Shown: one piece after another, positions 3,501 through 62,100 of the stretch | How positions within the stretch are numbered: position 1 is the stretch's first letter | Layout of the letters: each line of letters opens with the position of its first letter | Source of the DNA: Bugula neritina | Lineage: Eukaryota > Animalia > Bryozoa | Length of the DNA: 64,000 nt | NCBI GenBank assembly: GCA_964035545.1 | Contig: OZ037766.1 | Location: 3,462,722 to 3,526,721, forward strand | Direction: 5' to 3' | Program-made: the position numbers and the translations under genes | Notes under the pieces: generated by a model | What the model saw: only the letters and a program-made list of their open reading frames with translations | Databases searched by the model: none | What the model was told of the DNA's origin: nothing

Positions 3501-6500
3501 AAGTCTGGAACCAATCAACCATGTTCTACCATCAGATCAACAACTAGGTAATGAGTCATGCAGTGATAGTTATGCTAGCAAATGCCTATTTATTGATTCT
3601 TCAAATTGATAAACGAATGGTAAACTGTTTTTCATGAATCAATACACTATTTTATAACCTTGTTATGATTTCAAGTTGTATACTATAAGTGCATTAGTTT
3701 CTATAAGTGAAAATAGTAATTTGTTCAACTTTCAGAAATATCATAGTTTTTATTTGCTATGTCTGCAAAGCTAGTTTTATTTTCTGAAAATTTAGGAAGT
3801 CGAGAGGCAAGACACAGGACTGCATCCATTGAGTCATTTTTAAGCACAGATGGAAGTGTTACCTTGGAAGAAGAAGCCACCAGTAAAGCTAAGGGTAAGA
3901 GGCCGCTGTCACTCGTAGCTATGACTGGCTCGCTAGACTCTGCTGAGCCCAGGTCTCCCGCCGTGCTGACCTCACAACAAAGTTTTGATTCTGAGATAAG
4001 TCCAACTTGTGACAGCAAAGAACTGCTCAAGACTATCAACGAGGACATTAGCAAAATTAGAGAGAAAAAGGCGCAGAAGAGTGATTCCTCTTCAGAAACT
4101 TCATTAGATAGGTTTTCACACGAAGGTTCGACTTCAAAAATAGTGAGCAGCATAAGCCCGAAAATGCAAAAGTTGAATTTCACTGTTGAAGAACTGCCAG
4201 GTACGCTGCCAAGCCACAGTGTTTGTGTAGACAGCGGCTTGGCTATGGAAGAAGACAGTTTTATCGATCCGCTACTTCATCTGCACCACAGTCTTCAAGC
4301 TCAAGACGTCTTAGAGAATAAAGAAAGCAGAGAAGATGAGTTACTAAAAGACATTCTAAATCAAAGTTCTAACTTTAATGATCCTTTTGTAGAACCTCAA
4401 CTCTCTGTACCCCATTTAAGTCCAGGTGTGAAAACAGAATCAGCACTGGTTTCACCTAAAGGTTTCCAGTCAACCCCAGACCCTTCATTGTCTCATAAAC
4501 ACACCGATGGTTTGAACTCAAAGTTTCAATATTCACCTAAACCTGCTGAAAAAGCGGCAATATTTGTAAAGCCAGAAATAACAATCAGCACAGAGCCATT
4601 GTTTTCTAATCAAAATGAGTTTGTAAATAAATTGATGAACACCAATCCTGATGCACCATCGGAAGATTTGCTTGTCAAAGCTAAACTAATAAAAGTTGAT
4701 AATCACCCTGACACTAAAAAAGTTTTGAAAAACAGGTCTCACAGCGAAAGCGTTCCATTGAAATTTGCTGGAGAAAATAACAAAATTATAGATCAGCCCT
4801 TAGAACCTCTGTTGAGCTCTCAATCAGTGCCACTAAGAACTAAGCTAGACAGGCTGAGCTGTCTGTATGATCGCGATGATGGAACGGATCTCAAGATAAA
4901 GATGGCGGAACCATCCGGTCCTTATGATGTATTTAAAGCTCCAAAAAAGCATCAGCATCCTAGATCGAGGTAAACTATTCAGCTAAAGTTGTGTACTGCA
5001 TTTTCTTTCTAGCAGTAAAAGTCAACAGAGGCAGCTAAACATTAGTACACCGTGTCTAATTGAAAATTTGCATGGCACTTTTTCACCAAATGCAGCTGTC
5101 AATGATATAGCAATTGATACCAGTGAATTGAATTTTTTGATCTTTTATATTGTTTGGTTGTTTTGTGTGCATGGGTAAAAAATTGAAAGTAGATTTTAAA
5201 TTATCAGTTACAATATGAATTATATATATAACACTAATTTGTGCTACATCTACTTGTTAATTACTAAGGTGCTTCTACTTGTGGTTATATCTAGCTGCAA
5301 TGATTTACAGCAATAAAAAGTTTTGTGCAGGCATAAAAATGTATGACTACTGAAGTTATAAAAGATGTTCAAGATAATTAACTCAGACTAATATTAAATG
5401 AAAATAATATTATAGAGAAGACAACTCTTTACATTTTCAAATTATATTTGGCACTATTGAGCTCCACGCTTTAACTAGCATGTAAACCTATAGCTACTGG
5501 TATTTCAATGATAATATTTTATAAGTCACAGAACTTTTAACATTTATTTTCATCAAAAGTGTTACTTCAAAACTTTTGCTCCAAAACAAATCCTCATTAT
5601 TAAAAAAATTTCATATTGAAAGGCTTTTTTTGAAAAACAGTATGATTGTTATTGAATATGTCACAGCTACTCAATTGTAACTTATTTATATGTTTTACAC
5701 TTTGTTTAGGTCATTAGGAGGAGTGCTTGATTCAGATATCAGTTTGGAAGAGTTAAGAATCAAACCTGGAAGTTCATCAGAGTAGGTTTATCTTACATCG
5801 TAGTCAGTAGCTTTACTGTATATACAGTATACCACCTGTTATCCTAAATTCATTTTATGTAAACACAAGCCTTGTTATTGTAGAAGTATGTACACTCTCT
5901 TTATATATGATTATATTAGCATGAAACCATTTAGCTAATCATATGATTTGCTATAACTTCTAGAGAGATTGACAGTCACAAAGCTGGAAAGAAGAGTGAT
6001 AGGAGTAACAAAGTCTCACCTCGTTCTCATCAGGTGAATATAACTCCTCATTATCTTGACTATCTTGTTGCTGCTAAAAAATTTGGTGATTTTAGCGAAG
6101 AAATTGAAATGAGATGAACAGCAAGTTTTGAACATTACTTTTTGATCAATTAGCAGTTCAGTAAAAACCTTAGTAAATTTTTTCTATCCATCATCTTACA
6201 TAATACTATTTTTGTTATATTTAAATCATATTTGCTTTTCTCTCTCAAATTGTTAACTAATAGTAATAACCCAATATAGTTTTGAGCCTGAATTAATATT
6301 TTTTCATGGCGTTTCACTACCTATGTTCAATTAGTTGTCTTATAACTTAATACTTCTGTAGGGGTCACCAGTTGCCCTGAGGGCCAAGGGGCGAATAAAC
6401 AGACCAGTGCTAGACTTGGTACAGAAGTTTGATGCCCAAAGCAGCGACAGTTCATCACCGCTAGTCAGCCCAACGGCAATTCCAGTGTCATCCTCACCTC

Positions 6501-44100: not shown

Positions 44101-47100
44101 TGCATCGGATGGGGGAGAATTATTGTTAACTATCAGCCTACACTACAAATATAAGAATTTCTACTTCGGTTATTTATTCACTGCCCAATATAATCTCAAT
44201 TTGTGTGACAGCGAACTGCATATATTCATTATATTGCAACAAGACTTTATTGTGAAGGATGAAAAGACTATCGGAACAAAACAGTAAGCCTTAGAACCAG
44301 TTTCCCAGCTACACCAGTAACGATAGACTATTGAGAGTACCTCGCTAGTAGCTCCTGTGGGAGCACAGAACCACACAATGAGCTTATTACACTCTCACTG
44401 CTCTCTGACATCTGCCTGAAGGTGCTAGTGAATTCATCTGTTGAGCTGTAGAAACTTCCAGAAGCTATGAAGCTGTTGGATAGAAGACTCCGGTCGAATG
44501 AGATCTCGAGTTCATTGAGGCGAGACAGGATCACTTCCTCTTTGCCGATGGACAGGAGCACCCTGAAGAGGGCCAGAACGGAAGAGAGCCATCTTTCCTG
44601 CATTGCCCTGCTTCCCTGGATCATAGACATAGAGTTCAATATTATTTCTTCCTTATATAGGAGGTAGGTGCAGTAATAGAAAAATTGAGAAAAGCCTGTG
44701 TTCTAGATTAAGAATGTAGGAAAAAAAGTTATGTTCTTTCAAAAATTTCAGCCCGCACCCCAAACCAAAATTTATAAAGAAATTCAAAAAACTTAGGCTA
44801 TCGCAATTTCTCCACTAATACTCCTAAATGTTATATAGAATGCCAACATATTGACATAAAACATGCTCGGAAATTACCAAAAACAAATCTAAGTATTGTA
44901 TTTATAGTTAATAAATATTCACTATAAAGTAACTTGTATTTTTACCAGATGTTCCGGCTGAGTGAACAGAGTTTTGAGGAGCATGTCTACAGGTCTATAG
45001 ACTGAGGGAGATACAGCCAGTAGAATACTCTGGAGGGAGAACATAGCGCCCCGACTTTCCAACTCAATCTGTAAGAAAACAATCAATCAGGCGTGAACAC
45101 AACTCCAAGTTGTGAGTGCACAACATAGTAGGTGTGAGAAATGCAACGAGTTCTAACCTTTTGCTTAGAAATTAAGGGAAACAGGAGATCAATGATTTGA
45201 CGACTCAACTTTTTCCACTTCTCCTCGTTATCTTTCATCAGCTGGTAAAGCACAAGAGAGAGAAGCTCAAGAACCTGTAAAAAAGATTGTTGCATTAAAA
45301 ATATACGATATAATGTGTTTGAAATTAGAAAATGGGTAATAAACTCGAAATTTTGTAGATTTTAAGGAATTAGAAAAATAGAGCTTATAGGAGATTATGG
45401 CAAAGCATATCTTCTTTAAATTAACAATAGAAGTAACTCTTATGTGGAACAACAGTCATATTTAGAATGAGTTTAGTAAAAACTGAGAACAAAGCATTGT
45501 GATTTGGCAGATGAACAGTTTTTTGGGAATGAATGAAATTATCAATAAAACACTAATTATTTACAAAACTATTTCTCAAACTAAATCATATAGTGACAGC
45601 CAAAAACTTTTGTCCTGGAAATTATTTACAAATGCTGATCTAAGCAATAAAAAATTAGCATAACTATAAAAAGTAAACTGAAAGAATTAGGTAATATTTT
45701 GAAAAATGGTTGCTTAAATAATGCATTGAATTATTAATTTAGTAACAACTGTGTACGGCAACTGCTTAATAAATTTTAGTAAACTGACTATTTTAAATGT
45801 GTTTTAAAATTGATTTTACAAGATTTTTATGAAGAAAGGCATATATTCAAATTTACAAATTAGGTTTATTAAAAAAAAGTTTATATGGCATAGTGAGAGA
45901 AAAAAAATTGAATTATCTATCAAGTCAATAAATTTAGCTGGCACTTTAAATAAAGAGAAAAGAATGATCATTTCTGATGAGAGAAAAAACCGGACAAAAA
46001 CGTCATACCTTGGTATGGTGAATAAGACGGAGTAGCATGGAGGCCGTGACCTCTCTCTGAGTCTCAATGTCATGGAAGACAGTGTCACTATTTCCAGACG
46101 TGTTGAGAGATCGACACAGAAACAGGTCCTTCACCAGCATCTCTAGAGCTGGGATGGCTGCAAGGAAACAAGAACTGCCCTGTCTCAGGTGGTCATGAGA
46201 TTCAAAAGCAGCACATCACTACTCGAATAATTCACTTAGCAGAGGTGATAGCTGCACCAAAATTGGGAAATGCTAAAATCCATGTGAACTAAACATCATA
46301 ACAAAAAATATGATATGCAAAGTAAAACTGCAAACCACTAAAATCCAATAAAATTAAAGGATGTCCAGCCAATTAGTATGGCATATTCTGCATAATAATG
46401 GCTACTATCAATTTAAAGTAACTTTTTTTAAAAATAATAAACAAATAATGCGAAAATGAAGTAGAATGTTATCAAATAGACGGTAACACTAGTAAGAGTC
46501 ATGAGTTACCATGTGTAGTGGGATTCTGCCCGCTGGCCATTACTCCATCACACAGCTGTATAATAGTGGGCACAGTGATCAGAGTCTTAGAGTGCAGCTT
46601 TTCATACGACAGCAGAAGGAGTAACTGGAATATGGAGCGTATCAGACCAGCCTGCTCTCTGTTGAATAAAGTAGGCAGTCCGTATACATTACCAACAAAA
46701 CTTACTATTGACTCTTACACTGCAACAGGGCATAAGGGGAAACAACTCTCCATGAAAGCAATTATCTAGCAATTATGTTGACAATAAAATAAATACAAGT
46801 CAAGAGATGAGAAAATAAAAAATTCATTGATCTATAAAGCAGCATATCAGTGCAATTAGAGAAGGCATTGTAGTGTATATAGTATTATCTGTACATTGAC
46901 AGCAATAATGGCGAAGGAAAGCTCAGGCAAAAAAGCTATAGAAATACAGCATTACCTTGGTGGTCCTTCACTAATCATGTCCACCTGCTTCACTAGAAAC
47001 TTTAAATACACCTAAAATTAAAAGTGCAATAAAACATATAAACATACATACTATTATGCACTGAAGTGCTTCATAAAAAGTTGTGTAAAAATAACTTTTA

Positions 47101-50100
47101 AATACTACCAGAACACTACAACATGCTTATTTCAATATATAGCTATATGAGTGAGTGAGTGAGTGAGTGAGTGAGTGAGTGAGTGAGTGAGTGAGTGAGT
47201 GAGTGAGTGAGTGAGTGAGTGAGTGAGTCAGAGAGTGAGCGAGGGATGAGCGAGAGAGTTAGTGATGAGTGAGTAGTGAGTGAGTGAGAGACTAAAGTAA
47301 ATCATTTATACAAAAAAAAAATGTTTACACAAAAATCAGTTTACCAAAGTCGCAATTATCATGCCTTAAAATCCAACTTATAAGTAGTAATTGGCCTACA
47401 TTACTGAATAAATAATGCACAAAACACAGCAACATGAGACGCAAATAAATGGACGAACTCAACAGGAAACACCAAAGAGTAAATTTGTTAGCCTACAGTT
47501 GACATATATGCAGCTCAACTAACAGCATATCCTCACCTCGTCATTGTCTAGCAGGCAGTAGTTGACTCTGAGTTGTATCAGCTGTACGAGTAGACTGAGA
47601 ACCTGAGTCTGAAGGTAAACCGAACAGTTCATAGTGTACATTTTGAGAGCTTTGATGACCAGAGGCTCAAACAGGCGAATGTATGCCCCAACAGTGTTCT
47701 GCAACAAGATTATTAGGTGATACATCAAGATAACTGAGTTGATGATGTAAACTACTTTTCATTTCAGCACCAACTGTGACTAACTAACCAATTATCATAT
47801 CTGATAACTTCACCACATCACGTAAGAATTAAAATCAGCGCATTTTAACAATTTTATAAAAGAATGATGCCCGCAGTTTAAATCGCAACTATGCATCATG
47901 TATATAACCTTCAAGATAAAAACTGTGTTCCACTGATCAGTATTTAGTGTCAATAAAGAAAAATATTTGACGGTGGTGAGGAACTGCACTACCTTATCCA
48001 CAGTAGACCCTGATCTCAGAACAGCAGGCATCTTCCTTTCCTCACATCTTTTTATCACATAGATAACACTAAAAGAATAAATTAAAACTTTACAAGTTAC
48101 TAAGAGAAAGTATATATTACAGCCATGATACTTGCTAACAAGACTTGTACGTTCAAAACAGATGTTTCCTATATCCTTAGTGTACCTTTTGTGCTCTCGC
48201 ACATTGTAAATAGCCAACAGGCAGATGGTTAGAAAGTCAGAGAAGCTTACTTGCTGTGGTCCTCGGTCTCTACTCGGTAAAGATTGTGGGCTAAAGCCTG
48301 CGCAAAGTCTGCGTAGGGAGTAGCCAAACAGGAAGTAAACAGGCCAGGTTTGATCGCCGAAGTAGCAGGATTCACACTAGCTAAGGTCACTTCCTGTGAC
48401 CTTGATATGACCTTTTTTTCGACAAGGTCTTCGTATTGACTAGAGAGATTAGTGCCGAATAGCGCCTTGAGAAGCTGAAGAATGAAGAAGCAAGATAAGA
48501 TACAGACTGTATCAAATTGCCTTCTGGTTCGTGGAATGTCTCTTTTAGACATAAACAAGAAGCACAGTAACTTTACTTGGAAAAATAATGCAAAAACATC
48601 TGTACTGAAACGTAAAACAGAAATGCACAAACTTTGTCATGAATGCTAGATATAATAGACCAAATTTAGTATGAAAAGGAAAGCGATTTACGCAGTTTTT
48701 GCAAAAACTCAATTCAAATTTTAAAATTCTAGAGCCTGCAATTTAAAAATAATAGAAACAAGCCTTCCGACTTTTGCCCTGATAAATTTAAACGCCTTAA
48801 ATAAAAGGCGCACACTGCAGCCGGAGAAAAGAGAACGTACTTGTTGCACAAGGTGAATAGCTGCGACAGGTGAGGCAAGTGTTATGGGATTTAGATAGTG
48901 CAGTATTTCCTCGGCACACTTTCCTATTTCCTGCAGACTGGCTACTTCAAGCAGCTGAGAGAATACGACTAGAGTGTGATGAAGCATGCTACTGAACTTG
49001 TCCAGTTTACTCAGACTTAGTGACACCTACAGGGAAACAGTGTACCAACAAGAGATGATAGTGTCCACCAATACTAACAGATATTCTTCAGTTCTAAGTA
49101 TTTGTCAAGATTTGAAAAGTAAAAAAATGATCACCCCAAACTTTCACAATAAAGTAGTATAAGTAGTTTTTTATGATCTTGACGTAGAGGACTACTCTTA
49201 ACTCTTTTGCATTTTCACGACTGCAAAAACTAGTTCCTCCAGTAAATTAATCCACATGTATGACATCAAAGTTGCGTTTATACCTCTGCTGAAAAAAGTA
49301 CCGAGTTTAGGTTAATAACGCTTTTCCGGGTACCCCTTTATAGTCAAACTTAAACTCGTTGAAATCATATTGATGCGGTTGCTCACTTTCTGAAATTGAA
49401 ATTTGACTCGCATAATAGCTATTTGATGCCCTTTGTAAATGTCGTGAATTAGTGAAGCGGAAAGCATAAAAGCGATAATTGAGAAAGCGTAGGCTATATA
49501 ATTATAACCGTATAAGTACGTTGTCTAATCGCCAAAGTAATAACTAAACAACGATGTTTACAAGGAGTTATTACTCCTATTCCAAAATTGGCCGATTAAG
49601 TTATCACAGTACAAAAATTTCAACGAGTGGCTTTTACAATGCAATGCAACTCGGAGAAATTTCAACCCGGCCAAATTGAAATTTTGACCGAAAATCGTGA
49701 AGGTATAAACGCAACTTAAGTGAAGGTAGCAGCTGTGGTCAAGGAGTTGAGTTGCGTTTATACCTTCACAATTTTCAGTCAGAAATTTAACTTGGCCTAG
49801 TTGAAATTTCTCCAAGTTGCATTGAATTGTAAAAGTCACTTGTAAAAATGTTTGTACTGTCATAATTGCTTCTGTGCCACATATCAATAAGTCCTTAGCC
49901 TGATTTCTATCAGGATTTCTCACAGGAATAGCGACTATAAACTTCCATGAGTTTTATGAAATTAGGTGCTGGAAAACATAAGTAATAGAACTATTACTAC
50001 AATAAATTTTGAAATTGTGACATTTTCTACATATTTTTCATGTGTAGAATAAAGTTACGCATTTTGACAAAATATGTTTTGAACAATTTAATGGAACAGG

Positions 50101-53100
50101 CTATGGAAATGAGAGCTATGGCCAAGTACAGATTATACATATATATATTGTAAGCTACTGGTACATATTTCAACGCAACAGCGAAATGATGGAAAACCTT
50201 GCAGTATTTAAAACAATAAAATAAATCACCCCAAACTTTGATTTGATCTTTAAGTAGTGAACTTGGCAGTTTGCTACAATCTTGAGATAGAGGATAACTC
50301 CTAATAATATGCATACAACAGAAAAATGATTGAAAACCTTGTAGTTGAGATGAGCTCCTTTAACAGACTCGTGTAGCTTCATGTAGAAAGGTATGTGATT
50401 AAAGGCACCTAGCACTTCTTTCTTACTCTTTACCACCTTTTCAGCTTCTATAACAGCAAACAATTAGATAACAATACTTCTACGGCAGCAAAAATTAGAT
50501 AACAATACTTCTACGGTAACAAAGAATTGGGTAACAATACTTCTACAGCAGGAAATGCTTGGATAATAATAGAATGTCACTATTAAATTCCACAGAACAT
50601 TATGCAAGGCGTTGAGGATGGCGCATCTATAATAATTGTTAAAGCAAATGTTATTGCCTCTGAATACAGCATGAATAGCTTACTAATACTAGATTTTTTA
50701 CTATCTTCATTTTCTGCATGACTATAAGCAGCTAGGAGAATTGTACAGAATTATTATATCTAAGCAAAAAAAAAGTTGATAGATATGTCAAAGCTGTAGC
50801 TAGAACCTTAACGAAAATACTGCTGGACTCCTAAAATGTTGAATGTCGCAAATATTACGAGATGAAATCAATAGAGCTATTATACATTTAATCGAATTCA
50901 ATCAAGATTTCAATGAATGCTTGATCATGAAATATTTCACAGTAACATGGTGGTATGACAGACTGGCTAGGCTGCTAGAATGAAATGCAATACAACAGAT
51001 GCTGAAATCAGCCATCATCATTATCTAGTTCATATACATGATAAAATCTAATTACCTGACTCAAGGCCCAACAATATTTAAGATACCAGTACTGAATTGG
51101 AGACTCAATTAATGTGACTATGAAGCCAGGATGAAGTTCGGATAAAACTTCTATCGTGGAATTAAAATTAAGCAACAGTTGAGTGGTATACGCCAGGAAT
51201 TATGAACAGCCAATAAAATAAAGACATGAATTGGAACTTATGCAGGGACACTGTAGAGAGCTATAACTGACAATTACTATGGATGCAACTTTGCAACTGG
51301 AGCCAGAAGTGCACACAACTCCACGCAAGTAAATAGGCATGACAATCTCATCTATGCTTGATCCACGAACTTGATTATCAGAAGCAGCACTAGCCTCAGG
51401 GTTAATAATTAATTAATTAAAATATATACAGTGGTCGCTATCAGCAAGCCTAGTTCTTATGTCAAAAAGTATGTTTGATAGTTAAAATAAGTACACAATT
51501 GGCGCATTAAGTAAGAATTGTCTCATTTTCATCGTAATACAATGTCATGCCATTAAGCATATTTATCAATTGTTTAGATTTATATTTATGCTATTGCAAA
51601 TGATTTTGAATAAATGAAGAACACCAACAAAGGTATCAATTAAATACTTGATTAAAAGTTAAAAAGGAAGGCTGAGTGTAAAAGAGACTAAAGAATTATG
51701 ATGAAATAAAGACAAGTAGCATAATTATGCACTTGAACGTAGAGGTCAAAGGTTGCATTGCAGTGGCTTTACCCTTTTTTGTTCCTAAACATGACTTGTA
51801 AAATATTTGGCTGTGTAGGTGTGGCTTACATCTAAGGCATTATGCAATACATAGCGTCTAACATAACTTGTAACTGGAATTTAAAATATTGCAATTTAAA
51901 ATAAACTGAGTTTGTGCATATTGAACTGCAATAGAAAGCAACATGGATCATTTCGCTGCAGCTGCCTGGACTTTGGTTTTCATATTCTGTGCTGCCTACA
52001 GCCTCGAGATCAAAGAAAGATTTTATGGATTAAATGGCTTCGTGGATACCATCTTAATAAATAGAGAACCATATGCAAAGTTGGATGATGTAGTGATAGG
52101 CGGAGATGGATTTGATTATGTCCAGTGTGGTGATACTAATGTAACAGTAGAACTCAGTGAGCACCACATGCTATTACCAAATATCTTTACACTACGTGGA
52201 TGCAAAAGGATTGAATGCGGAACCATGATTGGGCTTCCAAGAATTATTTCAGGTTATGTTGAATGCAACACAACCAATGTGGCTGTTCCAGATGTTTTGC
52301 CCTTTACTTACTTGACCACATACAACGTGACCTCTGATTATGTGAGGATTTATCCAGATGTATCCAACATGTCAGTATTAAACCAAATACTTGGAGCATG
52401 TAATGAAAACGAAGATATATCTATAGACATTATGGCTGTGAATAGTGATAGAGTAACAGTAGATTGTTTAAATTCTACTGAAAATCCACTAGTAAGAGTG
52501 TTGACTGCATCTATAGAAGTTGGAGCATGTGTTGGAGACTGTGAAACCACTTGGAGAAAAGCCTTACAATCTAGAGAATTTGGCTGTAATTATACAAGTA
52601 CAGCAGAAACACGCCGCAACATCACAGTGGCTGAAGACAGTGTGACCGTGTCCAGCGTGTCCATCGAGTCAGATCCGATTTACTTGCTTTACAAGTGTTC
52701 ACCGAAAGCTACCACTACTACCACTGAAAGCACCACAACCAAAAAAATTACCACACCAACAACTCAAAAAATAACAACACATGCACAAACTGAAGTGGAA
52801 ATCATAACTATAGCCAAACCTCAAACTAGACTAATAACCAGAAGCACTAATAAAATAATTATCACTACAGGTGCAACCACAGAAGAGGAAACTGTGAAAG
52901 CAGAAATCAAAAAATCAAAGAGTGGGTCAATAAATGGATGTAAGAAGAATGCAATACTAATGCTTACAGCTATAACCTTGGCAATGGTGAAGTGAGATTG
53001 GGCCTGCAGTCAAATTAAGTCACCAAACAAATTGAAAAACAATTAGCACCAACGCTCAGGGTGAACTTGGAAGAATGAGCTAAAGATTTATTAAAAAAAC

Positions 53101-56100
53101 ATTTGAGTAAAAGTGAGCTGAGAAGAGAAAGCATTATGCTAAATATGATAGTTGTTGTTTTTCAAAAAACATATTATTTGTGAGGTTATATTATGTTGAT
53201 AAATTTTCTACAAACATGTAAATACATATCTTTGAACAAAATTATAATTTTCTTGATTATTTTTTTTTAGTCTAGAATAGTAGGCTAGCACACACCTCCA
53301 TGTTAGCTGATTGTCACGATTTTACAGCTAAGTTTCCTATGCTATACATAAAAATAGTGTCCAGTAAAATTGGCACAGCTAAAATGGCAAGGTAAAAATG
53401 GCACAGGTAATAATGGCACAGGTGGCAAAGTAGGTAATAATGGCACATTTTCAGTATTAGGGTTTTGAGTGGGAGTTGGGGGAATTGATTTTGGGGGTTT
53501 GAATTTGGGGTTTAAGGGTTTGGGGTTTGGAAAAATTCAACATCAGTGTGCCATTTTATTTACTTTTCCACTTGTACCTCTAATACCTGTGCCATTATTA
53601 CCTGTCACTTTACAGTGCTATTTTTACATTGCCATTTTTACATGTGCCATTTTAACGTAAAATTGTGGCTTACATCTCAGACAGCATGCAATACGTTGTG
53701 TCTAACATAACTTGCAACTAGAATTTAAAATATTGCAATTTCAAATAAACTGAGGTTGAAGCATTGGATGGCAATAGAAAGCAACATGGATCATTTCGCT
53801 GCAGCTGCCTGGACTTTGGTTTTCATATTCTGTACAGCCTACAGCCTTGAGGTCAAAGAAAGATTTTATGGATTTAATGGCTTAGTGGATTTTATCTTAA
53901 TAAATAGAGAACCATATGCAGAGTTGAAGAATATAACTATAGGAGAAGATGGAGTTGATTACGTCAGGTGTGGTGATACTAATTTGACAGAAGTACTCAG
54001 TGAGCACCACATTCTAATATCAAATACTGATATATTGAGTGGATGCAACAGACGTGAATGCGCATTTATAAATTTAACACCAAGAATTACAGGTTATGTT
54101 GACTGCAACACAACCAATGTGGCTGTTCCAGATGTTTTGCCCTTCACTTACTTGACCACATACAACTTGACCTCTGATTATGTGAGGATTTATCCAGATG
54201 TATCCAACATGTCAGTATTAAATCAAATACTTGGAGCATGTAATGAAAATGAAGATATATCTATAGACATTATGGCTGTGAATAGTGATAGAGTAACAGT
54301 AGATTGTTTAAATTCTACTGAAAATCCACTAGTTAGAGTGTTGACTGCATCTATAGAAGTTGGAGCATGTGTTGGAGACTGTGAAACCACTTGGAGAAAA
54401 GCCTTACAATCTAGAGAATTTGGCTGTAATTATACAAGTACAGCAGAAACACGTCGCAACATCACAGTGGCCGAAGACAGTGTGACCGTGTCCAGCGTGT
54501 CCGAAGCGTCAGATCCGATTTACTTGCTTTACACCTGTTCACCGAAATCTACCACTACTACCACTGAAAGCACCACAACCATGAAAGTTACCACACCAAC
54601 AACTCAAATAACAACACATGCACAAACTGAAGTTAAAATTACAACAAAGAAAGATTCAACTGTAGCCACAGCTCAAACTAATAACAAAATTATCACTACA
54701 GGTGCAACCACAGAAAAGGAAACTGCGAAGGCAGAAATCCAAAGATCTAAGAGTGGATCAATAAATGGATGTAAGAAGAATGCAATACTAATGCTTACAG
54801 CTATAACCTTGGCAATAATGAAGTGAGATTGGGCCTGCAGTCAAATTGCTTTACCAAACAAATTCAAGCAATTTAGCCCCAACACTCAGGGTGAGCATAA
54901 AAGAATGAGCTAAAGATTCATTAAATCAACTTTTAAGTAGAAGTGAGTTGAGAAATGAAAACATTATGCTAAAGATCATATTTGTTGTTTTTAAATTTGT
55001 GAGAATATAACTTCTATATTAGAGGATTTTATTATTGTTCTAATAAAATGAACACACGTTTCATTAAATGAAAAAAACCTGAAGGTCCAAAAATTGTGTT
55101 AGTTTCTAACATAGCATAAAAAGATGATATAAAACTATTAAAATCCATATAATTAATATGCACGCTTAGTATATAAGCATCATAAGTTACTATATTTATT
55201 GAGCATTGAAGGAAAGTTTGATGGAAGTTGTATATGCTAATCAAATTAACTAACTATAGTTTGCTAGACTTGCTACAAGTGTATTTCAGTAATCTGTAAT
55301 GCAGCAAATATTCAACAAAATAATGTACTAACAATATCATCATCAATGAATTATGATTCATTATTAAAATAGTTCAATGGACTCTTAAAATAGAATTTTT
55401 AAAATAAATATACAAAATAATTTAGGACTGAAGAAATGCTACACAGTTGCTTCTAAAGTTGATAATAAAACAGGTTTTAAATTGAAACAAATTGAATGAG
55501 GGTCATTTTACTTAATTTAGTACACACTGGAAATCTCCAGTTTTTAGCTATTTGTTACAATTTAGCTGCTAATGGACATGTGTTTTTGCCCAAAACTAGT
55601 AAAATATCAATAATAACATCTAAATAATCAAGGTTCTTTTTAATTTTGCTTAATTTCCCATGTTTTTTCCTATTTATTTAGCTAATTTTGATTGCGGACC
55701 GTTCCGGTTTTTTCGTAACGATCTGCCATCAAAAGTAACTGAAAAAGTAAGAAAAAACATGGGAACTTAAGCAAAATTAAAAAGAACCTTGATTATTTAG
55801 ATGTTTTTATTGATATTTTACTAGTTTTGGGCAAAAACACATGTTCATTAGCAGCTAAATTGTAAAAAATAGCTAAAAACTGGAGAACTCTAAACGTGCA
55901 GTTAGTTTTAATTTTCGTATAACACAATATTTGAATAAACTTTCTTGTATCACAAAAGTAGAATTAGAACATTGTAAGAAGTTGCCTGCAACTGCAGGAG
56001 AGTATAAACACCAAAGAGCCTAGTAAAACACCCACCAAACAGCAACAACGCAAACTGAAAGTAAAACAATTCATGGTAAACACAAACTACAAAGAGCATA

Positions 56101-59100
56101 AAAATAAAACTTAAAAGCCTGTCACGTTTTTATCAAGAGTTCAATGGAGTTAGAATTTACCAATTATTCTTTTTGAAAAGACGATTATTAGAGATGAGGA
56201 GCAAATTTGAATCAATATTGAAGACCTTGAGTAAAACTGAAAGTAGGAAATAGCGCCGCAAATAAAACTTAAGCTAAGTGACTTATAATCGTGGTGAGAA
56301 CTGTGATGGCACTGCGAAACTACACCCCCACCCTGCTGTCAACATAGCCTGGGAGTTTTCAAAGTAGCAAGTACAACCTAATGCTATTACTGATAGTGTC
56401 TATCATTACACCCATACAACTGTAAACTTATAGAGCTTCAAACCTTTAGCATTTTTGGGCTCCGTGGGCACATCACTGGCCTGAGGATCCTGTCTGTTGC
56501 CAACTCTCTTCTTTATGGGGCTCGTGATGGCCTCCCGAGCAGCATCAAGCACAGCCTTAGGATTAGCGCTGCTCACTAGACTTGTGTCTTCCAGGACGTG
56601 ACTAAATATGTTCAGCAGTCTAAAAGGGTAAACCACAACTCAGAGATCTGCACGCCTGAGCAGAGCTTCCAGCAATATTAAAGCAATGTTAATTTTAACA
56701 GCTAAGCTTAAAAATAAACTAAACCAACAAATGAGCCCAAATATTAGCCAACAGCGTGACTCTGTACAAGTTAGCCAACGGCGTGGCTCTCTACAAGTTA
56801 GCCAACGGCGTGGCTCTCTACAAGTTAGTCAATAGCGTGTCTCTTTATAAGTTAGCCAATAGCGTGACCTTTTATAAGTTAGCCAATAATATGGCCCTTC
56901 ACAAGATAGCCAATAGCGTAACTCTATATCTACGTAGGTATGAAACCAATAGAAAGGTCCGATACTAACTTGATAAGGTGTACTAGCAACTTATCAGCTA
57001 ATGGACTAGCAAGTCTGTCATATATCCCACACCAGCTTCTCTCCGTACCACCTAACAGCCAGAAACAAGATATACAGATCTCTGTACAGGATTGTCAATG
57101 TTCCATATTTATAATATACTTGATATTTAAATTGTATATCTTATTTATATCATAAACTTCACGCAATCTTCTCTTAAGTGCTTGAGATGATGTTTTTAAG
57201 GCGAAACCCTACAGTTCAGAATTTCTTGTTAGTTTTCCATTAAAATATGCGAATAACTAAACTTGAAATTCATAAAAATAAGTTTGAAAGAGTGCTATAC
57301 TTTGATTAGAGGATACTGTGCATGTATATTAGCTTGTGTGTCCAGTTAACAACTACTCCCAACAGTAAAACAAATTTAAAGTAAAAAGTTTTGTAGAACA
57401 CATGCTAATATGTGAATAAAAGGAAAATCCGCTTCATCCCAATAAGACATGACACTAATTATGAACTTTAATAGTTTAAGTTATGTAACAAGTTTATACT
57501 TTTGTATATTAGAGTACAACTACAAAATATAGTGAATACATAATTGCTGAGCAGATAAGCTGTACATTTCAGATTGAAATAGAAAATAATATCTTACTGG
57601 GAGTTGACTGCCCTTGTTTAAGAGCCGAAAGACACGCCCCTGAAAGTAGGTTCCCAGCCAATGAGAGAAGATCTTGATGAACCCCAAGATCTAGACTGAG
57701 AGGAGAGTGAGTTAGCAAAGACATAACGAGAGTGAGAGGTCCACCACCCGTTCCAACTCTTAGCTCGTCTAACATCAGAGACTTCATAGAACTACAATGT
57801 TTAAGGATATATTATTATTATAGTTAAACTTTTGACTTCAAACAAAATCAGGGGGAAAAAAGGAGTTTTACCAAGCAATGTCTTATACTAGTTTTATAAT
57901 TCATAAAACCTTCCCTTGAAATTTACTTTCATCAGAATAGCACCGCTTAAAACAATGGAATTTGTTCTACAAAATGTTTGTATTAACTCGCCATACTCTG
58001 TGACCTAGATACTGGAATTGACCTCGTCCCTAAAGTTGCGTTTGTACCTTTGCTGAAAAAACGTTCCAAGTTTTAGTTAATAACACTTGTCCGGTACCCC
58101 TTTATAGTCAAACTGAAAATCATTGAAATCAAATTAACGCGGAAGCTTACTTTCAAAAAGTGAAATCTGACGTCGTGAATTAGTCAAGTTGACAGCATAA
58201 AAGCGATAATTGAGAAGGCGTAGGCGATTGAATTATTAACATATAAGTCCATCATCTAATCGCCAAACTCACAACTAAATAACGATGTTTACAGAGAGTA
58301 ATTACTTTTTTTGAGTATTATTCTGAAATTGGCCGATTAAGTTATCACAATACAAAAAATTTTACGAGTGGCTTTTACAATGCAATGTATTCCAGAGAAA
58401 TTTCAACTCGGCCAAATTGCATTTCTGACTGAAAATCGTGAAGGTATAAAGGCAAGTTTAAAGGGTTCAGTGAGAAAGCTTCAATAATTTGGTAACATTT
58501 CCTTATAATATAAAATCTTAAATTCTTAATAAAATTTTCAATTTTCTATATATCTTTTAAGAATCTATCAGTATACAGACGAGCCTTTTTCAAATACCTA
58601 ATGCTCCCTCAACAGTCACCTAAGTTATTTTCTTCCCGTAAGGGAATATTTAGCAAGTACTGCAAATTTTCTTCTATAACAAATTTGTTAATGCATAAAA
58701 TCTATGCACAACAACAAGGCCTAAAATCAATGATGGGATGGTAACACAATTTCCAATCAGCAATAATGTTGCTTTTCTAATATTATATTTAATTCTATAT
58801 TTTTGGTGCATATGTTTTTGACTAAATTAATAGTACATTCAAATAATAAACCAGAATGCAAGTCAATTACCTTATTGTTATTCTAATGAAATTTTTGCTG
58901 TATATCTAGTAACGGGAAAGAAGGCGAATAATTTAAAAGTGAGATGACAAAACTCAGTAGGTCTGTCTGATAATGGACATATTGGTGGAAATAAAACCTT
59001 TAGTTAAATTGTATGTAAAAGGAATGCAGTCATCGGCAACATATTTTTTTCGACGTCTAAACAGTAGTAAATCTCCCAAAGTAGGCTTCAAACAGACGTG

Positions 59101-62100
59101 CATATTTTATGTCTGTAGAGGGTTTTAAGTCTAAAACAAGCAAGATTATGGTCTGGAGAGTATAGCTTATAGTTTATTGTAAGTAAGATCCTACGCACTG
59201 CATCACCAAACAATATACGCATGTTGAGACTACAACAGCCATCATTTGCTCACCTGGTTGTCGACGAATTAGATTTCAGGTTAGAAGCCGGTACTCTGGA
59301 CTTCTTGCCGCAGCTAATACCAGGGGCACAGGACCAGGCGTGCGGGTATTTAGTAACGGGATAGCTTTCTGACAGTTTATACAGCGCGTGGCATATCCCC
59401 AGCTATTCAAACACAGTATATAATCAGAAAAACTAAATATACAGTAAGATAATGAATGCACATTTGTTCTACTAAAAATAAAATATCAATTGGTATTCGA
59501 TTTATCTGCATATGGCAACAGTGTATAGAAAGTTTCAACAGATATTTGCAAACAAACTACATAATTTAAATATTAATTAATCAGACTAGTATATAAAATT
59601 TATTCATTGTTTAGAAAAAATTGTTTGTCATATATAGTTGGGAAATAATTCATAGAATCCAATAACCAGATTATTAAGATAACTCTTAGTAATTGGTCAT
59701 TCACCTCTTCAAATAATTACAATCAAAACCATCAGTTTGTAAAGATAACATTAAGTTTATATTTAGATATCATTGCACCAACAAATAAATATGATAACAA
59801 AAAGCTGCAGCAGCAAACCTTTGTATTCTGTAAGGAAGTGGCAGCAAACATGTCTAGTAGTCTGTACACAACTTTACTCAGTGAAGATTGTATAGCGTGA
59901 GATTTGGCCTTAGGATCTGACAGATCGGATGCCAAATAATACGGGCTGGGTAGAGCGTGTACCAGGGGAGGGCACTCAATGGGAAACTGCGCAGAGAATG
60001 GGTACATGAGAATGTTGAGATGACTGGTGGCTCTAGCTAGTAACACACTTTGGTGAGGGTGGTCAGATCCATGGAACAACTCAGGAATCAATCTGCAGAA
60101 TAAGTACGCTTAAAATTACTGTGACGTCAATCTATTGTAACGCATTGAAACTAATACATATATTTCTCTAGTAAGCTAACATTAGAAAATTTTCACATGT
60201 TATGGAGTTACCCTGAAATACAAAACGTTATTTGCTTGCACACAATGTATATAGTATTATAATTTACTATAGAAAAAGCAACAAAAATTTGATTATAATC
60301 CCTTCTGGTACACTGGAAACTGTTACTTGATAGGCTGCAAAAATGCAAGCAAGCATTCACACATAAATCGACCCCTAAATGATAGTTTCAAGGAATATGA
60401 ATATTAAGTGACACAAAACATTCACGAATCACTCTTATTGAATAATGAAAACAACTGACGCTACTAATGCTGTGCTGGCTGCCTGGCGAACCCTATGGTC
60501 CGAGTCTCCCAACAGCCTTAGCACCACCTCGTCCAGTATTTTAGTCTGTATAGACAGGCCAGAAAGATAAACCAACGGAAGCATATCTAACTCCGACACC
60601 AGCTCCAGCAGCTCAGACTGAAACAAACACAGCTCTAGTTTAATGTGTGTAGCACAGCATCTGTCCCAACATGTTTCAATTCATTGCAATGCAGCACAGT
60701 ATAAGCTGTGATGGTAAGACACAAATATCGACATATTCAGGAGAGTTTGATAAAACACAGTTTCAATTGGCAGAATTTGAAGTGTGACAGTTGCGCCGTG
60801 CATACAACACGTATTACATATTCATAGACAAAATTACTAGATGAAGCATTAACCTCATTTGAAAGCCTCTAAGTATCAACAAATATATACCAAATTCCGA
60901 ATGATGCTTTTTAGCAAAAAACCTTCCTTCACATGTTTACTTTACCATTAATATTTCTATACTACAAATCGTATAGATTCACAAAATTGAGCAGCGCATG
61001 CAGAGGTACTCAGTATGATTACCTTTACAAGCCAATAGCTGTTATTCACGTGTTGGAGTGCTTTCTCCAATAAGGTCAAGCCCTTCTGGTGATACTGGCT
61101 GTTGAGCAGAGTGTTGATGCAGGTTTTTATGGCTGACACGGCCAGCCTGGTGGTCATGGCACTCTCAGTATTAAGAAGATCCATCAGCATGCTGAAGTAC
61201 GACTCTAGCACTGTACAGTACAACAATATGCAGACTTGGAGTACTTGAACAAAGTAACTGAGTAATACTCTACTGCTGGTTCGGTGGTAGTAGCAACAAA
61301 GAACATTCTTTAACTGAAGGTGGTAAAAATGGCAAGCATAAAAATAAGCAAATCGGCTATATAAAACAGCAATGTACACATGAAGTAGAAAAGAAGCTAG
61401 TTGAGTCAGTTTACTTCATTTAGTACACACCAGCAACTTATGACCTAACATTAAAGTTTGCTCAAAATCAATTGAAATTTACTATACATGCTATTTTTAT
61501 GTGCTGGTTTTAACTACGCATAACAGAAAAGGCTGGAAGGGGATTCCCCAACATTAAAGCACAGGTCATTGTCATATGCACTTAATATTCTATATGTGTG
61601 ACCGTTACGAAAAAACCGTAAGGGTCTGTAACCAAAACTAGCTGAATAATTAGGAAAAAATGGGAAATAAAGCAAAATTAGAAAGAACTTTGATTATTTA
61701 GGTGTATTTATTGCTGTTTTACTAGTTTTGGCCAAAATACCATGTTCATTACCAGCTAAATTGTGAAAAATAGCCAAAAGCTGAAGATATCCAGTGTGTA
61801 CTAAATTAAGTAAAATGACCTAGTTATAAATCCAAATATAGTCAAGAGAAGTTTTGCTCATTATAGTTGAAAAATGTAGGAAAAGAAAATTTAGCTTTAG
61901 TACCTTGAGATGAGGTAGTGTTGATTAGCTGGGCACAGTGCACCCTGGCATGTATAAGAACACCAAGAACCTGGGCTACCATGCCTTGTATTTGGGGGTC
62001 AGAGTGGTGATGGTAGAGTAGCACATCCGAGAGTGGTTGATTCTCTGCAGATAAAATATAGCCTGCAAAAACTCCCTTAGATCTCATCAGATAAACTCAA

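What the first reader, a model, noticed from the sequence alone, without database searches (positions are those of the whole stretch)
51943..54826. Tandem surface-protein pair with hypervariable tip and invariant core: candidate recognition system
Seen: two intact intronless paralogues (signal peptide, 10-Cys ectodomain, Thr stalk, GPI-like tail). By hand alignment the first ~88 mature residues differ at ~32 positions plus one indel with all Cys kept, while the next ~133 codons show 1 replacement and 6 synonymous changes. The synonymous differences argue for purifying selection on the core rather than only very recent gene conversion. Inference: a diversified membrane-distal domain on a constant base is the pattern of immune, allorecognition or gamete-recognition receptors. 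I recognise no known family.
Basis: partly seen in the sequence, partly recalled or inferred. Interest (0 to 1): 0.8.

Follow-up and report, generated by a model that had tools for sequence, protein, structure and literature searches.

The report
Bryozoan orphan surface-glycoprotein gene pair
Two neighbouring genes of the moss animal Bugula neritina encode an undescribed, probably lipid-anchored surface glycoprotein; their "variable tip on a constant base" comes mainly from the middle of the genes being repeatedly copied from one onto the other, and nothing so far shows a self/non-self recognition system.

Summary
There are two intact intronless ORFs, A at 51943-52995 and B at 53786-54826. They show 32 replacements plus one indel in the 88-residue mature tip, and 1 replacement plus 6 synonymous changes in the next 132 codons.

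The genome is the UK Bugula neritina assembly. A second assembly from Virginia is a diverged sibling lineage (huntingtin exon dS 0.149) and carries the same pair, nested antisense in a huntingtin intron.

Four-sequence site patterns settle how the contrast arose:
- Both non-coding flanks and the tip follow orthology: 55 of the 58 informative sites there.
- The stretch from codon 128 (informative sites; differences thin out from about codon 103) to codon 285 follows "paralogues alike within each genome": 23 sites in a row, none for orthology.

So the constant core is concerted evolution by gene conversion after the lineage split, on top of moderate purifying selection (omega about 0.3 between lineages). 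It is not invariance.

The two tips behave differently. The tip of B is conserved (omega 0.13-0.18). The tip of A changes at or above the neutral rate (omega 1.6-1.9, not significant; 11 replacements to 0 synonymous among Virginia A copies, P 0.018), mostly in one loop.

There are only two copies in the genome. No relative was found outside B. neritina, no fold could be predicted and no RNA data were found. The recognition reading is possible but unsupported.

The parts
51820..53166 (+). Duplication unit A (5' flank, gene A, 3' flank)
   Evidence: Self-BLAST gives 88.3% identity to 53664-54995. The same unit is present in the Virginia contigs L003 and L004.
53664..54995 (+). Duplication unit B
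   Evidence: Orthologous to L004 9902-11210 by flanks and tip.
51820..51942 (+). Conserved 5' flank of gene A with an AT-rich TATA-like block (about 51880-51905): putative promoter and 5'UTR
   Evidence: The aligned 141-base stretch (123-base flank plus the first 18 coding bases) shows 91% mean column identity over 7 copies of two lineages. The flank follows the orthology pattern (7 of 8 informative sites). Promoter function is inferred.
51943..52995 (+). Gene A coding sequence, 350 aa, no intron
   Evidence: Intact in both lineages.
53786..54826 (+). Gene B coding sequence, 346 aa (alternative in-frame start at 53768)
   Evidence: The upstream ATG is conserved in the Virginia B copy.
51943..52002 (+). 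Signal peptide of A (codons 1-20, cleavage after AYS inferred)
   Evidence: Hydrophobic N-terminus read from the sequence. No predictor was run.
52003..52266 (+). Tip domain of A (residues 21-108, 4 Cys), with a hypervariable loop at residues 93-103 (52219-52251)
   Evidence: Orthology pattern at 33 of 34 informative sites. Omega 1.6-1.9 between lineages. Replacements cluster in the loop (permutation P 0.002).
53846..54106 (+). Tip domain of B (residues 21-107)
   Evidence: dN 0.030, dS 0.164, omega 0.13-0.18 against its Virginia orthologue (P 0.0006-0.002).
52250..52796 (+). Gene-conversion tract in A (about codons 103-285: end of tip, whole 6-Cys core, first half of stalk)
   Evidence: 23 consecutive 'concerted' sites from 52326 to 52796 and no orthology site. 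0 of 100000 permutations reach that run. The tract limits nearly coincide in both lineages.
54090..54634 (+). The same conversion tract in B (approximate limits)
   Evidence: Coordinates transferred from the A-B alignment.
52803..52909 (+). Second half of the stalk in A (codons 287-323): a 'swapped' segment whose closest relative is the B copy of the other lineage
   Evidence: 10 'swapped' site patterns. p-distance wA-h4B is 0.087 against wA-h4A 0.148.
52915..52992 (+). GPI-attachment-like C-terminal signal of A (small residues, short polar spacer, 13 hydrophobic residues, Lys)
   Evidence: Read from the sequence. Nearly invariant among copies. No GPI predictor was available.
53364..53627 (.). 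High-copy inverted-repeat (MITE-like) element in the spacer between A and B; not part of the genes
   Evidence: Inverted arms. Summed contig depth is 1e4-1e5 against about 115 for single-copy sequence.
50335..50439 (-). Huntingtin exon piece (Htt_N-HEAT positions 438-472), the nearest HMM-confirmed host-gene exon on the left
   Evidence: G000:C2:3513056-3513160.
57593..57757 (-). Huntingtin exon piece (Htt_N-HEAT positions 301-355), the nearest HMM-confirmed host-gene exon on the right
   Evidence: Gene calls in the Virginia assembly place Htt on both sides of the pair.

Best explanation
A and B are two real, lineage-restricted (orphan) genes of Bugula neritina. Each encodes a secreted, heavily glycosylated head of about 230 residues (a 4-Cys tip plus a 6-Cys core) on a Thr-rich mucin-type stalk, with a C-terminal signal of the GPI-anchor type. 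The pair lies antisense inside an intron of the huntingtin gene.

The duplication is older than the split between the UK lineage and the Virginia lineage of the B. neritina complex. Since that split, the middle of the unit (about codons 103-285) has been homogenised between the copies by gene conversion, independently in both lineages. The tip, the distal stalk and both non-coding flanks have not. Unequal crossing-over also occurs: one Virginia contig (L003) carries three copies, although the two Virginia contigs look like mixed haplotype consensus. The 'variable tip on an invariant base' is therefore mainly a conversion mosaic laid over moderate purifying selection on the core.

The two tips have different fates. 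B's tip is conserved. A's tip changes at about or above the neutral rate, mostly in one loop between Cys92 and Cys108.

Inferred, not shown: the tip is the paralogue-specific, ligand-facing part of a cell-surface adhesion or recognition glycoprotein; conversion stops at the tip because sequence divergence there blocks it, possibly helped by selection; the protein is GPI-anchored and expressed.
For: - Real genes: the ORFs are intact in two lineages. Purifying selection acts on the core (omega 0.24-0.39, P 0.0003-0.011; ML 0.29-0.45) and on B's tip (omega 0.13-0.18).
- Lineage divergence: flanking huntingtin introns are 85-91% identical and pooled huntingtin exon pieces give dS 0.149, dN 0.008.
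- Source of the two assemblies: UK specimen, 216.00 Mb (PMC11480708) and Virginia specimens (PMC7576161).
- Conversion: core p-distances are wA-wB 0.018 and h4A-h4B 0.033, against 0.071-0.091 between orthologues. In the tip, orthologues differ by 0.054-0.142 and paralogues by 0.20-0.27. In the flanks, orthologues differ by 0.05-0.09 and paralogues by 0.10-0.17.
- Site patterns: of 98 informative sites, 62 follow orthology (55 of the 58 in the flanks and tip). 23 in a row in the core follow the concerted pattern and 10 in the distal stalk follow the swapped pattern. 0 of 100000 permutations reach that run.
- Tract limits nearly coincide in both lineages.
- Unequal crossover: L003 has three units and L004 two. 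The middle unit has a B-type start to its 5' flank and an A-type remainder.
- Orphan status: only 2 loci in the 216-Mb genome, with either a single protein or a profile as query. Only B. neritina hits came from the 5.8-billion word search and the 1.84-billion profile search (the two other hits are tandem-repeat artefacts). No hit in Pfam, PDB sequences or the Atlas.
Against: - No expression evidence. No RNA run holds the stretch, and the 'RNA-Seq' metagenome contigs also cover intergenic DNA, so they are DNA.
- No transcript-derived protein fragment is in the protein collection.
- The fold is unknown (AlphaFold pLDDT 31 and 37), so a 'binding tip' is only an architectural inference.
- The GPI anchor and signal peptide were judged by eye.
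- That the two assemblies are sibling species rests on 20 kb around this locus plus the literature, not on unlinked loci.
- The coincidence of conversion limits with the tip/core border in both lineages could also mean that selection keeps the tips apart, which would favour the recognition reading.
Confidence: 0.72

Rival explanations
1. One reading: a recognition system (immune, allorecognition or gamete/species recognition). The membrane-distal tip is kept diverse by positive or balancing selection, and the core is kept constant because it does the shared structural or signalling job.
For: - A-tip omega is 1.6-1.9 between lineages.
- There are 11 replacements and 0 synonymous changes between two Virginia A copies (LRT P 0.018).
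- Replacements and three independent indels cluster in one loop, residues 93-103 (P 0.002), while all Cys and 43 of 87 tip columns stay fixed.
- Glycosylation sequons in the tip differ between copies.
- Conversion stops at the tip border in both lineages.
- Larval kin recognition has been reported once for a Californian B. neritina population (Keough 1984, cited in PMC10078279).
Against: - Omega above 1 between lineages is not significant (P 0.2-0.28), and A-tip dN (0.174) barely exceeds background dS (0.149), so relaxed constraint fits as well.
- B's tip is conserved (omega 0.13-0.18).
- There are only 2 copies in the genome and no large repertoire.
- The B gene is identical on the two Virginia contigs, and A copies differ by 2-4%, like the neighbouring introns.
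- Both non-coding flanks escaped conversion as well, so no selection on the tip is needed.
- B. neritina colonies do not fuse, and kin-biased settlement was not reproduced in other populations (PMC10078279).
- There is no signalling domain and no expression data.
Confidence: 0.12
2. Copy A is a redundant duplicate whose tip is drifting under relaxed constraint. It is kept open only because conversion from B keeps repairing its core. There is no distinct function for A.
For: - A-tip omega is statistically indistinguishable from 1, and its dN is about equal to the neutral dS of huntingtin.
- A versus B is strongly asymmetric: 32 replacements to 5 synonymous against 6 to 8.
- A-type copies vary in number and one Virginia A copy is frameshifted, though that may be an assembly error.
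Against: - The A ORF is intact in both lineages and in two of three Virginia A copies.
- All four tip Cys and about half of the tip columns are invariant, and changes are concentrated in one loop rather than spread evenly.
- There are no stop codons. However, about 1.6 stops are expected in 37 neutral changes (my own rough estimate), so intactness alone is weak evidence.
Confidence: 0.15
3. The UK and Virginia sequences are not sibling lineages but ancient haplotypes kept at this locus by balancing selection. The 9-15% divergence would then itself be the sign of a recognition locus.
For: Both assemblies carry the name Bugula neritina. Divergence around the pair is high: 85-91% identity in the surrounding introns and flanks.
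Against: - The divergence is uniform over all 20 kb compared, including huntingtin introns and exons 10 kb away (exon dS 0.149, omega 0.06).
- B. neritina is a documented complex of cryptic species, and the samples come from Plymouth and from Virginia.
- The two Virginia contigs differ by only 0-5%.
- Another agent's note on an unrelated gene of this genome also speaks of two diverged lineages (s1-451114; unchecked).
Confidence: 0.04
4. These are not protein-coding genes but chance ORFs or a decayed mobile-element or viral envelope remnant in an intron.
For: They are intronless in an intron-rich genome, nested in an intron, flanked by high-copy repeats, and have no homologue anywhere.
Against: - Two 1-kb ORFs are kept open in two lineages at dS 0.15-0.2, with omega significantly below 1 in the core and in B's tip.
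- The protein has a coherent secretory architecture.
- There is a conserved 5' flank.
- No transposase, reverse-transcriptase or other long ORF lies nearby.
- There are only two copies in the genome.
Confidence: 0.02

Closest known systems
Concerted evolution of tandem duplicates by partial gene conversion, with a diverged segment left outside the tract (textbook cases: primate globin duplicates, opsin genes, MHC and KIR genes; from my own knowledge)
   Same: Paralogues within a genome are more alike than orthologues in a defined tract, while the flanks keep orthology. There is copy-number change by unequal crossing-over. The tract is bounded by more diverged sequence.
   Different: The protein here is an orphan of unknown function. 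Only two lineages are available, so the number and direction of conversion events cannot be resolved.
GPI-anchored mucin-type surface glycoproteins (general architecture: signal peptide, folded Cys-rich head, Ser/Thr-rich stalk, GPI signal)
   Same: The order of parts is the same, with many N-glycosylation sequons, a Thr-rich stalk, and a short hydrophobic C-terminus after small residues.
   Different: The head matches no known domain by sequence (Pfam, PDB sequences, 1.84 billion representatives). The anchor has not been shown experimentally.
Ly6/uPAR three-finger proteins (10-Cys, GPI-anchored)
   Same: There are ten ectodomain cysteines and a GPI-type tail.
   Different: The 10 Cys are spread over about 230 residues instead of about 80, and there is no UPAR_LY6 hit in Pfam. 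It is not a member.
Invertebrate allorecognition genes (Hydractinia Alr1/Alr2, Botryllus FuHC/fester; PMC3342096, PMC9546547 listed)
   Same: It is a cell-surface protein of a colonial marine invertebrate, with the most variable part farthest from the membrane.
   Different: Those genes are transmembrane IgSF or EGF-type proteins with extreme allelic polymorphism, in animals whose colonies fuse or reject. Here no Ig domain was detected, no high allelic diversity was seen, there are two copies only, and colonies are reported not to fuse.
Fast-evolving gamete-recognition proteins (bindin, lysin/VERL; from my own knowledge)
   Same: One copy's exposed domain evolves at omega of 1 or more between sibling species.
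   Different: There is no sequence or domain relation (no ZP or other Pfam hit), no evidence of gamete expression, and the excess of replacements is not significant between lineages.

Membership tests
Tandem duplicates under concerted evolution (gene conversion) | In the tract, paralogues within a genome are closer than orthologues between genomes | tested here: met
   Core p-distance is 0.018 (UK) and 0.033 (Virginia) between paralogues, against 0.071-0.091 between orthologues. Core dS is 0.06-0.07 against 0.17-0.20.
Tandem duplicates under concerted evolution (gene conversion) | Outside the tract the copies keep orthology, so the duplication predates the split | tested here: met
   55 of 58 informative sites in the 5' flank, tip and 3' flank follow the orthology pattern.
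Tandem duplicates under concerted evolution (gene conversion) | Site patterns cluster along the sequence beyond chance | tested here: met
   There is a run of 23 concerted sites among 98 informative sites, and 0 of 100000 permutations reach it.
GPI-anchored mucin-type surface glycoprotein | N-terminal signal peptide | tested here: inconclusive
   A hydrophobic N-terminus with an AYS/LE junction is seen by eye. No SignalP-type tool was available.
GPI-anchored mucin-type surface glycoprotein | Ser/Thr-rich stalk between the folded head and the membrane | tested here: met
   Residues 253-330 are 37-44% Thr+Ser in all copies.
GPI-anchored mucin-type surface glycoprotein | C-terminal GPI signal: small omega-site residues, polar spacer, hydrophobic end, no cytoplasmic tail | tested here: inconclusive
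   The pattern is present by inspection and nearly invariant among copies. No predictor or experiment was available.
Ly6/uPAR | Match to the UPAR_LY6 three-finger domain (8-10 Cys in about 80 residues) | tested here: not met
   No Pfam family reaches E <= 1 except a chance Rep_fac-A_3 hit far below its cut-off. Cys spacing is incompatible.
Allorecognition locus | Exceptional allelic polymorphism concentrated in the distal domain | tested here: inconclusive
   Only two Virginia contigs and one UK haplotype were available. B is identical on the two contigs, and A copies differ by 2-4%, like the flanking introns. The contigs look like mixed haplotype consensus, so the sample is poor.
Allorecognition locus | The organism shows fusion/rejection or kin discrimination | not testable with these tools
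   Literature only: colonies do not fuse, and kin-biased settlement was reported once and not replicated (PMC10078279).
Positively selected recognition protein (gamete/immune type) | dN/dS significantly above 1 in the binding domain | tested here: inconclusive
   For the A tip, omega is 1.6-1.9 with P 0.2-0.28 between lineages, and 11 replacements to 0 synonymous with P 0.018 between two Virginia copies. For the B tip, omega is 0.13-0.18.
Positively selected recognition protein (gamete/immune type) | Expression in gametes, immune cells or contact surfaces | not testable with these tools
   No RNA run holds the stretch.

The most novel reading that the evidence does not exclude
Copy A's tip loop (residues 93-103) is under diversifying selection as a species- or partner-specific recognition surface. 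Candidates are sperm-egg or larva-substrate/kin recognition, or recognition of the vertically transmitted bryostatin-producing symbiont, which differs among the cryptic species. Copy B would supply a conserved partner function, and conversion would keep their shared core compatible. That would make this a bryozoan-specific recognition module built on a fold with no known relative.
Probability: 0.1. Interest if true: 0.65.

Novelty: new member of a known kind. Interest (0 to 1): 0.3.

Why it matters
The finding is a clean, small example of how partial gene conversion can mimic a "hypervariable tip on an invariant base". A two-paralogue comparison within one genome cannot separate that from selection; one sibling-lineage comparison resolves it.

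Biologically it adds an orphan, probably GPI-anchored glycoprotein pair to the many lineage-specific surface proteins of bryozoans. It flags one fast-changing loop that could be tested cheaply by population resequencing.

It also gives a local measure that the two public "Bugula neritina" assemblies are distinct lineages (synonymous divergence about 0.15). That matters for anyone who uses them interchangeably.

Tried and rejected
- **Pfam** scan of both proteins: nothing.
- **ESM Atlas** feature search, whole protein and ectodomain: no usable hit.
- **Word-based protein search** with the whole protein and with the core alone, the second to catch fragments from transcriptome or Logan assemblies: only the four annotated Virginia B. 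neritina proteins.
- **Exhaustive profile search** of 1.84 billion representatives: only B. neritina. Two further hits (P0004, P0006) are translations of perfect tandem repeats whose scores add up over 29 and 8 weak stretches, and I rejected them as artefacts.
- **Profile against PDB sequences:** nothing below E = 1.
- **JGI metagenome scan:** no relative.
- **AlphaFold2** on the 5-sequence alignments of the ectodomain and of the core alone: pLDDT 31 and 37, unusable. A Foldseek PDB search with the second model gave no match at E <= 0.001, as expected for such a model. I did not run further fold libraries on these models.
- **Tip versus core self-comparison:** no internal repeat.
- **Sequencing runs:** no RNA holder. 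The two "METAGENOMIC RNA-Seq" runs cover intergenic sequence at about 6-12% divergence, so they are DNA of the Virginia-like lineage and say nothing about expression. Logan contigs of the source DNA run show about double depth over the core, consistent with two copies, but give no heterozygosity.
- **Literature search** for the locus-tag prefix: no relevant paper.
- I recomputed the string inside the script instead.

Full report
**1. Observation**

They are 81% identical as proteins. They sit in a duplicated unit, 51820-53166 versus 53664-54995, that is 88.3% identical as DNA.

- Mature residues 21-108: 32 replacements plus a one-codon indel.
- Codons 109-240: 1 replacement and 6 synonymous changes.
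- Tip versus core at the base level: 54 of 261 against 7 of 396 differences, Fisher P 1.4e-16.

The architecture is as described:
- Ten ectodomain Cys are conserved in every intact copy.
- There are 7-10 N-glycosylation sequons.
- The stalk is 37-44% Thr+Ser.
- The protein ends in 13 hydrophobic residues and one Lys after small residues.

No signal-peptide or GPI predictor was available, so those two features rest on inspection.

**2. Whose genome, and what there is to compare with**

The word-based protein search found only three proteins, all "hypothetical protein" of Bugula neritina, at 74-82% identity. The window's assembly has 216,009,554 bases. That matches the 216.00-Mb Darwin Tree of Life assembly of a Plymouth (UK) specimen (PMC11480708). 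The database proteins come from GCA_010799875.2, made from two colonies collected at Oyster, Virginia, and described as highly heterozygous (PMC7576161).

In that assembly the locus is on two contigs:
- L004 has two units, both intact ORFs.
- L003 has three units. The first and third carry frameshifts, but their protein pieces equal the L004 copies, so the frameshifts are probably assembly indels.

In all three versions the genes lie on the strand opposite to huntingtin (Htt), between Htt exons. In the window, the nearest HMM-confirmed exon pieces are at 50335-50439 and 57593-57757 on the minus strand.

The UK and Virginia sequences are only 85-91% identical across the 20 kb that can be compared. 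Pooled Htt exon pieces give dS 0.149, dN 0.008. B. neritina is a known complex of cryptic species. I therefore treat the two assemblies as sibling lineages. That is an inference from 20 kb plus the literature, not from unlinked loci.

**3. What makes the core constant**

I aligned all seven units and computed distances by segment.

| Segment | Orthologues | Paralogues |
|---|---|---|
| 5' flank | 0.08-0.09 | 0.10-0.15 |
| Tip | 0.05-0.14 | 0.20-0.27 |
| Core | 0.071-0.091 | 0.018 (UK), 0.033 (Virginia) |
| 3' flank | 0.05-0.08 | 0.14-0.17 |

In the flanks and the tip, orthologues are the closest pairs. In the core the order is reversed.

Four-sequence site patterns give the same picture:
- The 5' flank and tip together have 40 orthology sites, one concerted and one swapped; the 3' flank adds 14 orthology sites and one concerted.
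- From 52326 to 52796 there are 23 consecutive concerted sites and no orthology site.
- From 52803 to 52909 there are 10 sites at which UK-A groups with Virginia-B and UK-B with Virginia-A.
- No permutation out of 100,000 gives a concerted run that long.

So the duplication predates the lineage split. The middle of the unit has since been homogenised by gene conversion in both lineages, and the distal stalk has been exchanged between copies in one of them.

The limits of the low-divergence block nearly coincide in the two lineages. The left limit is at about 52249 in the UK pair and 52249-52319 in the Virginia pair. The right limit is at about 52797 in both.

The three-unit Virginia contig, whose middle unit has a B-type start to its 5' flank and an A-type remainder, shows that unequal crossing-over also happens here.

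**4. Selection**

All figures are Nei-Gojobori counts and pairwise codon maximum likelihood.

- *Core between lineages:* dS 0.17-0.20, dN 0.044-0.072, omega 0.24-0.45, significantly below 1. The core is constrained but not invariant: 13-21 replacements.
- *Core between the UK paralogues:* dS 0.069. This dates the last conversion at less than half the lineage divergence. The 6-to-1 ratio of synonymous to replacement changes agrees with purifying selection but does not argue against conversion.
- *A versus B in the tip:* dS 0.27-0.37 and dN 0.23-0.34, omega about 0.85.
- *Tip of B, orthologue comparison:* dN 0.030, dS 0.164, omega 0.13-0.18 (P 0.0006-0.002). Conserved.
- *Tip of A, orthologue comparison:* dN 0.17, dS 0.10, omega 1.6-1.9 (P 0.2-0.28). 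At or above the neutral rate.
- *Two Virginia A-type copies in the tip:* 11 replacements and no synonymous change (LRT P 0.018).

Half of the tip columns (43 of 87) and all four tip Cys are invariant. Replacements and three independent indels pile up between Cys92 and Cys108 (permutation P 0.002). That is what a surface loop on a fixed disulfide scaffold looks like. It fits either diversifying selection on that loop or locally relaxed constraint, and with two lineages I cannot tell which.

**5. What the protein is**

No family could be assigned:
- Pfam: none.
- Atlas: none.
- Profile search of 1.84 billion representatives: only B. neritina plus two tandem-repeat artefacts.
- PDB sequences: none.
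- Metagenomes: none.
- The genome itself: only these two loci, even with a profile as query.
- AlphaFold2 with the five available sequences: failed, pLDDT 31 and 37. A Foldseek search with the better model found nothing.

It is an orphan as far as present catalogues go. Other bryozoan genomes could not be searched here.

Expression is untested. No RNA run holds the stretch, and the two runs labelled RNA-Seq are metagenomic DNA of the Virginia-like lineage, because they also cover intergenic sequence.

Evidence that the genes are functional is evolutionary: open frames in two lineages, omega below 1, and a 5' flank that is part of an aligned 141-base stretch (123-base flank plus 18 coding bases) with 91% mean column identity and a TATA-like block.

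**6. Most likely mechanism**

*Shown:* an old tandem duplicate whose central 0.55 kb undergoes recurrent conversion, with moderate purifying selection on the core, a conserved B tip and a fast A tip.

*Inferred:* the product is a GPI-anchored, heavily glycosylated head held away from the membrane by a mucin stalk, and the 4-Cys tip with its variable loop is the copy-specific contact surface.

Conversion probably stops at the tip and at the distal stalk because divergence there blocks heteroduplex formation. The same holds for the non-coding flanks, so selection need not be invoked. The matching limits in two lineages leave room for selection against homogenised tips.

**7. The recognition idea**

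It is not excluded, but its usual supports are missing:
- There are two genes, not a repertoire.
- No exceptional allele divergence is seen in the small sample. B is identical on the two Virginia contigs, and A copies differ by 2-4%, like the flanking introns. Those contigs look like mixed haplotype consensus, so the sample is poor.
- There is no signalling part.
- B. neritina colonies are reported not to fuse. Kin-biased larval settlement was reported once and not reproduced elsewhere (PMC10078279).

Other agents' notes on this genome list much larger diversified receptor families as allorecognition candidates (unchecked by me). I give the recognition reading about 0.1.

**8. Verdict**

This is an undescribed orphan surface-glycoprotein pair with a textbook conversion mosaic. 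It is of modest interest, with one testable lead: the loop of copy A.

Noticed in passing
window 53238-53571 and 55409-55900: Two very high-copy repeats lie inside the huntingtin intron. One has inverted arms at 53364-53447 / 53547-53627. The other is a 353-base near-palindrome at 55534-55886 (90% self-complementary). Summed contig depth is 1e4-1e5 against about 115 for single-copy DNA. They look like MITE-type elements.
   Followed up: partly
window about 45100-61250, minus strand: This is a huntingtin (Htt) homologue. Eleven exon pieces match Htt_N-HEAT. Between the UK and Virginia 'Bugula neritina' assemblies the ten ungapped exon pieces give dS 0.149, dN 0.008 and the introns are 85-91% identical, so the two public assemblies are distinct lineages. 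In GCA_010799875.2 the gene predictor split Htt into two models exactly at the intron that holds the nested pair.
   Followed up: partly
L003 8108-13413 versus L004 7672-11210: There is a copy-number difference in the Virginia material: three units on one contig and two on the other. The extra middle unit is a hybrid (B-type start of the 5' flank, A-type body), as expected from unequal crossing-over. Blocks of zero mismatch alternate with blocks of 1-5% between the contigs, so they are probably mixed haplotype consensus.
   Followed up: partly
window 53768-53785: Copy B has an in-frame upstream ATG that would add MAIESN to the signal peptide. It is conserved in the Virginia B copy and absent from all A copies.
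   Followed up: no
window 902-1591: Two overlapping long ORFs here are translations of a short tandem DNA repeat (Tyr/Thr/Ile/Leu-rich peptide repeats). They are most likely not a gene.
   Followed up: no
window 3759-4973, plus strand: This is a 404-aa open frame rich in Ser, Pro and Glu, probably one large exon of a bigger gene. I did not examine it.
   Followed up: no
window 49268-49865 and 58032-58455: These are dispersed repeat copies (82-83% identical) on both sides of the nested pair, one of them internally palindromic. The same element is inserted between the gene copies in the Virginia contigs (L003 11628-12060, L004 9422-9854) but not in the UK spacer.
   Followed up: no
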